DNA of 64,000 nt from Lepidodermella squamata (GCA_047495785.1 JBLDXI010000067.1:90662-154661), one strand, 5' to 3'. Positions 22,071 through 23,093 are shown, counted from the stretch's first letter. Notes: generated by a model not told the origin, from the sequence alone. Translations and numbers: made by a program.

Positions 22071-23093
22071 ACGTGTAATCTACACTTTGATCATGCCAAT
22101 CAGGCCGAGAAGCGTCCCGATAAGCAGCGTATAATGCAGCAAAGTGGCACAGGCCACGCATGTCTAAGTACACTCACTACGTGTAATCTACACTTTGATC
22201 ATGCCAATTAGGCCGAGAAGCGTCCCGATTAGCAGAAAAATAGAAGATGATTAGTAGCAGGCCGCACATGTCTAAGTACACTCTCAACATGTAATCTACA
22301 CTTTGATCATGCCAATTAGGCCGAGAAGCGTCCCGATTAGCAGAAAAATAGAAGATAATTAGTAGCAGGCCGCACATGTCTAAGTACACTCTCAACATGT
22401 AATCTACACTTTGATCATGCCAATCAGGCCGAGAAGCGTCCCGATACGCAGAAAACTAAACGGCATCAATCTTGAAGCATATCATTAACTTGATCACACA
22501 TCACGATGTTAATAAAATCAAAATTATCATGCGAGCGGAGCGAGCATGTGGTATGACCAAGTAAATTTACATTTTTACAGCGCTCATTAATAGATCGTAT
22601 TTGCATGCTCGCTCCGCTCGCATGCTAATGTTATTTATATTAACATCGTGTTTTCTGTGCTATCACTTTACGCCGGTTTTTCAATTAAACGATCACTACG
22701 CTGCGTATCGGGACGCTTCTCGGCCTGATTGGCATGATCAAAGTGTAGATTACATGTTGAGAGTGTACTTAGACATGTGCGGCCTGCTACTTTTTGTAGC
22801 TTAATACGCTGCGAATCGGGACGCTTCTCGGCCTGATTGGCATGATCAAAGTGTAGATTACATGTTGAGAGTGTACTTAGACATGTGCGGCCTGCTACTA
22901 ATTATATCCTATTTTTCTGCTAACCAGGACGCTTCTCGGCCTAATTGGCATGATCAAACTGTAGATTACACGATGAGTGGGTACTTAGACATGCGTGGCC
23001 TGCTTCTAATTATCTTCATTTTTTCTGCTAATCTGGACGCTTCTCGGCCTGATTGGCATGATCAAAGTGTAGATTACACGTGGTGAGTGTACT
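22071..23093. repeat. Palindromic array of 108-bp U2-like/anti-18S repeats (4 inverted + 4 direct)
   Basis: Left-arm units start at 22071, 22179, 22287, 22395; right-arm units at 22707, 22815, 22923, 23031; the arms are reverse complements. Confidence 0.92.

What the first reader, a model, noticed from the sequence alone, without database searches (positions are those of the whole stretch)
22153..22181. The U2-like block is fused to a segment antisense to the host's own 18S 5' domain (scaffold-plus-guide-like chimera)
Seen: 22153-22181 reads GCCACGCATGTCTAAGTACACTCACTACG, while this array's 18S (window 71-97, 18S nt ~49-75) reads GCCATGCATGTCTAAGTACAC--ACTACG. That is 20 of 21 identical, then 6 more after a 2-nt gap. 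Most other full units keep CATGTCTAAGTACAC exactly. On the U2-sense strand a unit reads [U2 nt ~3-37]-ATTACA-[anti-18S ~28 nt]-[variable linker], and in some units the junction forms a mini hairpin (GTGTA-GAT-TACAC). An element sitting in 28S therefore stores pieces of two other conserved multicopy RNA genes in a regularly spaced array. Inference, speculative: an RNA module in which an snRNA-derived scaffold presents an anti-rRNA guide, used for targeting, for silencing inserted units, or for interfering with pre-rRNA processing. Alternatively it is a fossil record of previous target sites. I know of no described element with this architecture.
Basis: partly seen in the sequence, partly recalled or inferred. 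Interest (0 to 1): 0.88.

Follow-up and report, generated by a model that had tools for sequence, protein, structure and literature searches.

The report
U2/18S chimeric repeats in rDNA transposon
A non-coding mobile element sitting in the 28S rRNA gene carries arrays of a 108-bp repeat made from the first ~40 bases of U2 snRNA joined to a ~28-base antisense scrap of 18S rRNA. This looks like an inherited fossil of gene fragments, not a working guide RNA.

Summary
Window 22153-22181 matches 18S nt 49-75 (20/21, then 6/6 after a 2-nt gap), with none expected by chance. It lies next to an antisense copy of host U2 snRNA nt 3-38.

The host element is 2345 bp and non-coding, with no terminal inverted repeats. 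It sits in 28S as a tandem pair with an 8-bp duplication, GGGAAGAG. About 10 loci share this exact site. A ~71%-identical sister family (D) sits ~4 bp away.

D units read U2 nt 3-42 followed directly by antisense 18S nt 76-56. A and D keep different flanks of the 18S match, so the fusion arose once, before the families split.

The U2 block is almost invariant (95-98%). It also occurs without any 18S piece in three other families (E, F and the dispersed G). The 18S piece decays (59-85%).

The block runs from the U2 transcript's 5' end to nt 36-43. That is where this genome's Jockey-like LINEs cut U2 genes and where their own U2-derived heads end.

Nothing supports a scaffold-plus-guide RNA: single units fold no better than shuffles, nothing matches the 28S target, no RNA data exist, and sense and antisense copies face each other in one hairpin.

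The closest precedent is Pokey's chimeric rDNA-derived repeats.

First-stage notes of this scan describe the same arrays on other pieces of this genome.

The parts
22153..22181 (+). The finding: 18S-like piece (sense on +), the best-preserved copy. It matches 18S nt 49-75 at 20/21 plus 6/6 after a 2-nt insertion.
71..98 (+). Source-like stretch in the true 18S gene (nt 49-76), repeated in every rDNA unit of the window.
21169..21176 (+). Target-site duplication GGGAAGAG in 28S (rDNA unit position 4578-4585). It recurs at 23522-23529 between the two copies and at 25875-25882 after the second.
21177..23521 (+). Element A, copy 1: 2345 bp, non-coding, no terminal inverted repeats. ATCACCG/CGGTGAT motifs lie in both orientations near both ends.
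23530..25874 (+). Element A, copy 2: identical, in tandem.
21474..21534 (+). 61-nt island (GGGGAAAATGGGCCCCTTAGAATGGG...) kept at ~91% between families A and D. Its origin is unknown.
21670..22026 (+). Array of 18.8 copies of a 19-bp unit, ATCAAGTAGTACTTGATCT. Families D and E carry it in diverged form.
22074..22455 (-). Left array of 108-bp units. The U2-like blocks lie on the minus strand at 22080-22117, 22188-22225, 22296-22333 and 22404-22441, so the 18S-like pieces read as 18S sense on +.
22500..22660 (.). Central palindrome between the two arrays. It is the turn of the ~1-kb inverted repeat 22071-23081.
22697..23094 (+). Right array of 108-bp units. The U2-sense blocks lie at 22711-22748, 22819-22856, 22927-22964 and 23035-23072. 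The anti-18S cores lie at 22765-22776, 22873-22884 and 22981-22992.
23188..23342 (+). Array of 8-bp AAAACTAG units in the right arm.

Best explanation
The segment is one copy of a ~28-nt antisense fragment of 18S rRNA (nt 49-76). It became fused once, in an ancestral element, to a copy of the 5' end of U2 snRNA (nt 2/3 to 42). The fused unit was then amplified into tandem subrepeats. These subrepeats form the two inverted arms of a foldback-like, non-autonomous DNA element that inserts at one site of the 28S gene.

Shown:
- The chimera is real and derives from the host's own U2 and 18S.
- It predates the split of two element families.
- The U2-like block is far better conserved than the 18S piece, and it occurs without the 18S piece in further element families.
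- The block's limits are the U2 transcript start and nt 36-43. That is the region where Jockey-like LINEs of this genome integrate into U2 genes and where their own U2-derived 5' heads end.

Inferred:
- The U2 block entered the element lineage as a retro-derived LINE/U2 5' junction or head. It is now kept as a reiterated cis-module, most likely a protein-binding site needed for propagation of the elements.
- The 18S scrap is a passenger (captured or filler DNA from the surrounding rDNA, or from a LINE leader) that is slowly decaying.
- It does not act as a guide.
For: Real chimera.

Single old origin: D units read ..GTGTAGTATC|CCG(A)TAGTGTGTACTTAGACAT(Y)GA(Y)GG, which is U2 nt 3-42 followed directly by antisense 18S nt 76-56 or 76-50. 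A units keep the other flank..CATGCGTGGC. So the two families (~71% identical) retain different ends of one 18S piece.

Conservation gradient: U2 block 97.6%, 18S-like 85%, linker 68% in 14 full A/B/C units. In 11 D units the figures are 95%, 59% and 44%.

Block without 18S piece: E on C13, F on C64, and family G at 13 or more dispersed loci. A, D, F and G share the non-U2 prefix GGAC; A, D, E and F share the GC-ATGATC deletion. This points to one origin rather than repeated capture.

The block starts at the transcript 5' end: U2 upstream flanks are not included.

LINE link:
- A U2 gene on C2 is split after nt 43 by a polyA LINE with TSD TGTAGTATCT.
- A second U2 gene is broken after nt 42.
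- At C15, U2(1-42) is followed by a second U2 head to nt 36 and then LINE 5'UTR. The same head plus UTR lies outside any U2 gene at L060 6550-6621.
- The LINE has APE and RT domains.

Element biology: all A/B/C and D copies lie at rDNA position 4578-4590. Tandem copies are separated by the TSD.

Precedents: Pokey carries chimeric ITS2+IGS repeats (PMC3849761). U2 heads are added to LINE/SINE 5' ends (PMC4494074).
Against: No autonomous partner or transposase was found, so the idea that the block is a binding site is pure inference.

The present LINE head ends at nt 36, and what follows it (TTTAACGC...) is not the 18S-like piece. The LINE-junction origin therefore rests on coincident boundaries, not on sequence continuity.

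The 12-nt core GTACTTAGACAT is nearly invariant in the full A/B/C units. Some constraint on the 18S piece cannot be excluded.

A similar 18S-like motif (20/22 to D units) sits in the 246-bp repeats at the 5' end of the rDNA-spacer LINE. That could mean a shared function rather than a passenger. The match was found post hoc.

Expression is untested.
Confidence: 0.55

Rival explanations
1. Hairpin-RNA source. The element is co-transcribed with 28S by Pol I. The two inverted arrays then fold into a ~400-bp imperfect double-stranded RNA, which is diced into small RNAs. These silence inserted rDNA units or the element family, and the U2- and 18S-matching small RNAs are by-products.
For: The inverted arrays 22071-23081 are ~84-90% complementary and flank a central palindrome. 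The element lies inside the Pol I transcription unit. Rfam microRNA-precursor models give sub-threshold hairpin hits in the element's 19-bp array and central palindrome.
Against: There are no RNA data at all. The same architecture is typical of foldback and MITE elements without any RNA role. This reading does not explain why only the U2 block is conserved across families that are not in rDNA.
Confidence: 0.12
2. Record of the DNA element's own earlier homes. Ancestors of the element sat in a U2 gene and in 18S, and picked up flanking target DNA by aberrant transposition or repair. The pieces mark former insertion sites of this transposon lineage.
For: Dada transposons carry short subterminal motifs identical to a motif in their target RNA gene (PMC3706591). 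The families here are specific to multicopy RNA genes. The U2 piece ends in the region that site-specific elements target.
Against: The pieces lie ~900 bp from the element ends, not at the termini. No relative sits in a U2 gene or at 18S nt 49-76 today. The only elements found interrupting U2 at nt 42/43 are LINEs. The U2 piece starts at the transcript start, which suggests an RNA-derived copy rather than a DNA flank.
Confidence: 0.15
3. First reader's model. Each unit encodes an RNA in which a U2-derived scaffold presents an anti-18S guide, used for targeting, silencing or interference with pre-rRNA processing.
For: The U2 positions kept in all families (nt 3-14 and 24-38) are those that pair with U6 and the branch site in real U2 (established knowledge of U2). 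The complementarity to 18S is 15-27 nt. An 18S-like motif also occurs in the leader of an rDNA-resident LINE.
Against: The supposed guide is the decaying part, and it is absent from E, F, G and several D units. Units fold no better than shuffles. U2 stem-loop I is not preserved, and no promoter, Sm site or snoRNA boxes are present. Nothing matches the 28S target. Sense and antisense copies are present in equal numbers in one transcript.
Confidence: 0.07
4. Chance resemblance. The 18S and U2 likenesses are accidents in AT-rich repeat DNA.
For: The pieces are short.
Against: None are expected in 100 shuffles for the 21-mer at up to 3 mismatches. Alignment scores are far above the shuffle maxima for both the U2 and 18S parts. 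An independent family keeps the other flank of the 18S match. The block contains a host-specific U2 variant.
Confidence: 0.02

Closest known systems
Pokey (piggyBac superfamily) of Daphnia and its mPok MITEs
   Same: A DNA transposon with a fixed insertion site in 28S and non-autonomous derivatives at the same site. It carries 2-5 tandem copies of a chimeric unit built from pieces of the rDNA unit: ~50 bp of ITS2 plus ~200 bp of IGS (PMC3849761).
   Different: Pokey uses TTAA and has inverted terminal repeats and a transposase. Here the duplication is 8 bp (A) or 9-10 bp (D), there are no terminal inverted repeats, and no transposase was found. The site lies elsewhere in 28S. The captured pieces are a U2 5' end and an antisense 18S scrap, arranged as two inverted arrays. 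There is no sign of concerted evolution with 18S.
Dada DNA transposons (Kojima and Jurka 2013)
   Same: They insert strictly into multicopy RNA genes and have no terminal inverted repeats, only short subterminal inverted motifs. Tandem insertions are separated by just the target duplication. They carry a short motif identical to part of a small-RNA gene (PMC3706591).
   Different: Dada duplications are 6-7 bp. Known targets are U1, U6, tRNA and 5S genes, not 28S (PMC8869645). No Dada transposase was found here. The gene-like motif here is internal, 38-42 bp long, reiterated, and matches U2 rather than the actual target.
Foldback-type elements and Pack-MULE-style gene-fragment capture
   Same: Long inverted arms built of tandem subrepeats; 8-10 bp duplications; short fragments of unrelated host genes fused inside a non-autonomous DNA element. 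This comparison rests on my own knowledge of these families.
   Different: No MULE or Foldback termini or transposase were identified. The fragments are only 28-42 nt. One of them is conserved across families, unlike typical passenger fragments.
snRNA-derived heads on retroposons (SINEU; Tx1/Keno-group LINEs) and the U2-targeting LINEs Keno and Utopia
   Same: U2 5' sequence beginning at the transcript start is added to element 5' ends (PMC4494074). The retrotransposon target lies in the branch-site-binding region of U2: 3' flanks start at nt 39 in Utopia/Keno (PMC4640811). This genome has LINEs in U2 at nt 34-43 and LINE copies with a U2 head.
   Different: The host element here has no polyA tail and does not look retroposed. 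The U2 piece is embedded in DNA-level arrays in both orientations and is joined to antisense rRNA.

Membership tests
Dada superfamily | Insertion at one fixed site of a multicopy RNA gene | tested here: met
   All 10 A/B/C junctions read GTCCTGGGAAGAG|CCACCG. All D copies lie at rDNA 4581-4590.
Dada superfamily | Target-site duplication of 6-7 bp | tested here: not met
   The duplication is 8 bp (GGGAAGAG) in A and 9-10 bp (within AAGAGTTCTC) in D.
Dada superfamily | No terminal inverted repeats; short subterminal inverted motifs; tandem copies separated only by the duplication | tested here: met
   The ends CCACCGTTTTTT... and ...CCGAGGGTTTG are not inverted repeats. ATCACCG/CGGTGAT motifs lie near both ends. 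There is a tandem pair with GGGAAGAG between the copies.
Dada superfamily | Dada-type DDE transposase in autonomous members | tested here: inconclusive
   No longer copy shares the termini. The genome could not be searched with a Dada transposase because none was available from a tool.
piggyBac / Pokey | TTAA target duplication and piggyBac inverted terminal repeats | tested here: not met
   The duplication is GGGAAGAG, and there are no inverted terminal repeats.
hAT superfamily | 8-bp duplication plus short terminal inverted repeats | tested here: not met
   A has the 8-bp duplication but no terminal inverted repeats, and D has 9-10 bp. For contrast, the unrelated MITE at 50109-51048 meets both criteria.
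MuDR / Foldback group | 8-10 bp duplication and long inverted arms of tandem subrepeats | tested here: met
MuDR / Foldback group | MULE-type terminal repeats or transposase | tested here: inconclusive
   None is seen in the copies held. The genome was not searched for MULE transposases.
snRNA-headed retroposon (SINEU-like) | PolyA or LINE-type 3' tail and retroposition-type flanks | tested here: not met
   The element's 3' end is ...CCGAGGGTTTG with no A-run. Units occur in both orientations inside one element.
U2 snRNA gene (RF00004) | Full-length U2 with Sm site and 3' stem-loops | tested here: not met
   Only nt 2/3 to 38-43 are present. Rfam gives no U2 hit at E<=1 in 20500-24500, while 47 true U2 genes score 101-161 bits elsewhere in the genome.
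Guide RNAs (C/D or H/ACA snoRNA-like) | Match to a curated family, conserved boxes, and a stable fold | tested here: not met
   No snoRNA family is found in the arrays. Unit folds have z = -0.8 to +0.3.

The most novel reading that the evidence does not exclude
The U2 5'-end block, with U2 nt 3-14 and 24-38 kept almost unchanged in at least seven element families, is a functional module borrowed from the spliceosomal RNA. It could work as DNA, as a docking site shared by the elements and the U2-targeting LINE machinery. It could also work as RNA, as a U2 5'-end mimic released from Pol I co-transcripts. In the rDNA-resident families the attached anti-18S segment would then add nucleolar or pre-rRNA pairing. 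The recurrence of an 18S-like motif in the leader of an rDNA-spacer LINE would fit this reading.
Probability: 0.12. Interest if true: 0.8.

Novelty: new variant of a known kind. Interest (0 to 1): 0.42.

Why it matters
Few DNA transposons are known to be specific to rRNA genes. Pokey is the classic case, and Dada elements target small RNA genes.

Two sister families of non-coding elements fixed at one 28S site would add a case with different ends and duplication length.

The more interesting point is the U2 5'-end block. It is conserved across otherwise unalignable element families. Its boundaries coincide with the integration point and 5' heads of U2-targeting LINEs in the same genome. This hints at traffic of sequence modules between retrotransposons and DNA elements that share multicopy RNA genes as a refuge.

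The guide-RNA idea would have been remarkable, but the evidence gathered here does not support it.

Tried and rejected
1. Is the 18S-like piece just a diverged continuation of U2 (nt 38-80)? No. Most alignment scores are at shuffle level. One unit type scored 24 (p~0.004), but that alignment was not examined.

2. Does the U2 block mimic the 28S target or any rDNA stretch? No.

3. Are the other D 'spacers' fragments of rDNA or other loci? No.

4. Does the sequence after the F block continue the LINE 5'UTR? My by-eye alignment was not significant.

5. Is there a conserved hairpin between the 11 nt upstream of the block and the spacer after CGGCC? 73% of cells are paired against 28-47% in slid controls, with few compensatory changes. 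The pairing is not kept in E or in one arm of G. The structure was derived from A itself, so it is left as a weak lead.

6. Autonomous partner sought by termini: none.

7. Insertions in 18S at nt 49-76: none.

8. Metagenome scan for the block: no match.

9. RNA evidence: the only run holding the element (X1) consists of DNA-like contigs, and the related run X2 lacks it.

10. Two pattern searches failed because I set the wrong gap length. This was corrected.

They were read only through pattern matches of 80 nt or less.

Full report
**Setting.** The window is a eukaryotic rDNA array with a unit of 8455 bp. 18S starts near window 23, and Rfam reads 28S up to 21176. One 28S gene is interrupted at 21177-25874 by two identical tandem copies of a 2345-bp non-coding element. 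The octamer GGGAAGAG (rDNA position 4578-4585) stands before, between and after the copies, and uninterrupted units read GGGAAGAGTTCTC. The element has no terminal inverted repeats. ATCACCG/CGGTGAT motifs lie near both ends in both orientations.

Inside the element, from left to right, are:
- two ~125-bp repeats;
- a 19-bp array (21670-22026);
- an array of 108-bp units (22074-22455);
- a central palindrome;
- the same 108-bp units inverted (22697-23094);
- an 8-bp array (23188-23342).

**The observation.** Window 22153-22181 matches 18S nt 49-75 at 20/21, plus ACTACG after a 2-nt insertion. A search for the 21-mer at up to 3 mismatches returns the seven true 18S copies and 12 element copies, with 0.00 expected from shuffles. 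The alignment score against the whole rDNA unit is 42, against a shuffle maximum of 31.

On the opposite strand each unit begins with GGACGCTTCTCGGCCTGATTGGCATGATCAAAGTGTAG. The host has at least 47 U2 genes, which read ATCGCTTCTCGGCCTTTTTGGCTATGATCAAAGTGTAGTATCTG. The block is therefore U2 nt 3-38, and it includes the host-specific ATGATCAAAG.

**Relatives in the same genome.** The genome is 121 Mb.
- The element (family A) and 95-96% variants (B, C) occupy about 10 loci. All have the junction GTCCTGGGAAGAG|CCACCG.
- Family D is ~71% identical in the arrays and is an almost perfect foldback. It sits at 4 loci in 28S about 4 bp further on, with a 9-10-bp duplication within AAGAGTTCTC.
- A and D share only three islands: a 61-nt island, the 19-bp array and the U2-like units.
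- A solitary relative (E) lies between host genes on C13.
- An unrelated-looking MITE on C64 (F) has one block.
- A dispersed family (G, at least 13 loci) has two blocks in inverted orientation ~1.05 kb apart.

**What the relatives show.**

1. D units read U2 nt 3-42 (..GTGTAGTATC), followed directly by CCG(A)TAGTGTGTACTTAGACAT... This is antisense 18S nt 76-56 at 21/22, and one unit extends to nt 50. The best A unit keeps the other flank (...CATGCGTGGC). Two diverged families keep different ends of the same 18S piece. The piece is therefore truly 18S-derived, about 28 nt long, and it was already fused to the U2 block in their common ancestor.

2. E carries U2 nt 2-43, while F and G carry nt 3-38. 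None of them has an 18S piece. A, D, F and G share the non-U2 prefix GGAC. A, D, E and F share the deletion that turns GGCTATGATC into GGC-ATGATC. The blocks therefore descend from one captured copy rather than from repeated captures.

3. Conservation is uneven. In 14 full A/B/C units, mean pairwise identity is 97.6% for the block, 85% for the 18S-like stretch and 68% for the linker. In 11 D units it is 95%, 59% and 44%. Some D units carry unrelated sequence in place of the 18S piece, and that sequence matches nothing else in the genome.

The conserved part is the U2 block.

**Origin of the U2 block.** The block starts at the U2 transcript's 5' end. The variable upstream flanks of U2 genes are not included. 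It ends at nt 38-43.

I searched for U2 genes broken in this region.
- On C2, a U2 gene is split after nt 43 by a 5'-truncated, polyA-tailed LINE with duplication TGTAGTATCT (U2 nt 34-43).
- On C13, a U2 gene is broken after nt 42.
- On C15, U2(1-42) is followed by a second U2 head running to nt 36 and then by LINE 5'UTR.
- The same head plus UTR lies at L060 6550-6621 outside any U2 gene, so this LINE carries a U2-derived head.

The C2 LINE is the 3' part of an APE+RT element with at least 40 near-identical copies. That element sits antisense in the rDNA spacer at TTAGTATCAAC..., a target that shares TAGTATC with U2.

Published work shows the same themes. Keno and Utopia integrate in the branch-site-binding region of U2, with 3' flanks starting at nt 39 (PMC4640811). 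U1/U2 sequence is repeatedly added to the 5' ends of SINEU and Tx1-group elements (PMC4494074).

The block in the DNA elements has exactly the limits of such a LINE/U2 5' junction or head. This is an inference from boundaries. The sequence that now follows the LINE head does not match the units.

**Origin of the 18S piece.** No element sits in 18S at nt 49-76 today. The piece could be filler or captured DNA from the surrounding rDNA.

The 246-bp repeats at the 5' end of the spacer LINE contain GATAGTGTTGACTTAGACATTGTTGGCT in sense orientation. This is 20/22 to D units and 21/26 to antisense 18S (p~0.001-0.015, post hoc). The similarity does not extend further, and the repeats may be coding. 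I leave this as an unexplained lead.

**Tests of the guide model.**
- Single units fold no better than shuffles.
- Rfam finds nothing in the arrays.
- Stem-loop I of U2 is not preserved, and the spacer between the two conserved halves of the block differs between families.
- Nothing in the units matches the 28S target.
- Every element carries equal numbers of sense and antisense units in facing arms. A co-transcript would therefore fold on itself.
- No RNA run is available. The only run holding the element (X1) behaves as genomic contigs.

The model is not disproved, but it has no support.

**What it most likely is.** It is a 28S-specific, non-autonomous, foldback-like DNA element. Its arms are arrays of a chimeric fossil unit.

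The U2 block is conserved in families that share nothing else, which argues that it is a cis-module the elements need. A reiterated protein-binding site is the simplest guess, but with no transposase in hand this is inference.

In behaviour the element resembles Dada: an RNA-gene target, no terminal inverted repeats, and tandem copies separated by the duplication (PMC3706591). It fails Dada's 6-7-bp duplication. In cargo it resembles Pokey, which carries chimeric rDNA-derived repeats (PMC3849761). It fails TTAA and inverted terminal repeats. I therefore call it a new variant of a known kind.

**Earlier notes of this scan.** First-stage notes describe the same arrays on other pieces of this genome, as well as the U2-inserted and spacer LINEs. 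I used them as leads only.

Noticed in passing
window 50109-51048 (duplications at 50101-50108 and 51049-51056): A second, unrelated 940-bp non-coding element sits in another 28S copy. It has an 8-bp duplication CAAGGAGT and terminal inverted repeats CAGACTWTCGGTCTG, so it is hAT-like. It lies in the highly conserved GACCCGTCTTGAAACACGGACCAAGGAGTCTAAC stretch of 28S.
   Followed up: partly
L045 4721-6835 (G000:C119), also C82, C58 and C47: Sister family D is a nearly perfect 2.1-kb foldback in 28S, about 4 bp downstream of the family A site, with a 9-10-bp duplication. Two families therefore use almost the same 28S site.
   Followed up: yes
G000: C7:2479251/2480307, C9:391338/392393, C11:1704979/1706012, C19, C26 (2 loci), C42, C46, C48, C74, C103: Dispersed family G has pairs of U2-like blocks (GGACGCTTCTCGGCCTTGATGRCTATAGATCAAAARTGTAG) in inverted orientation ~1.05 kb apart around an AT-rich core. 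The copies are highly similar to each other. They could be read only through pattern matches of 80 nt or less.
   Followed up: partly
L060 2358-4800 (G000:C2:1152857-1155300): A U2 gene is split after nt 43 by a 2.2-kb 5'-truncated polyA LINE with duplication TGTAGTATCT. The LINE is 98-100% identical to at least 40 copies, many of them in the rDNA spacer.
   Followed up: yes
G000:C15:3235893-3236095 and L060 6550-6621: LINE copies whose 5' end is a U2-derived head (to nt 36), followed by TTTAACGCAAA(G)TTCGGATTATTCTG. At C15 the head follows the target's own U2(1-42) with a 3-nt ATC overlap. This is the signature expected if a U2-promoter co-transcript retroposed into another U2 gene.
   Followed up: partly
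L062 1-420 and L063+L062 joined, ~5870-6590 (G000:C62): The 5' region of the rDNA-spacer LINE holds 2.9 copies of a 246-bp repeat. Each contains GATAGTGTTGACTTAGACATTGTTGGCT, which resembles both antisense 18S nt 47-73 and the D-unit piece. Its significance is borderline and post hoc.
   Followed up: partly
   Followed up: partly
window 22697-22748 and equivalents: The 11 nt before each block (TGCTAATCGGG) can pair with the spacer after CGGCC (CCTGATTGGCA). Families D and F can pair here with different letters, but E and one arm of G cannot.
   Followed up: partly
L050 (G000:C62:122000-131999): One family B copy lacks its first ~35 bp and abuts a rearranged rDNA segment (28S position ~5995 instead of 4585). 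Near it, a spacer insertion interrupts the unit at rDNA position 7358-7369.
   Followed up: no
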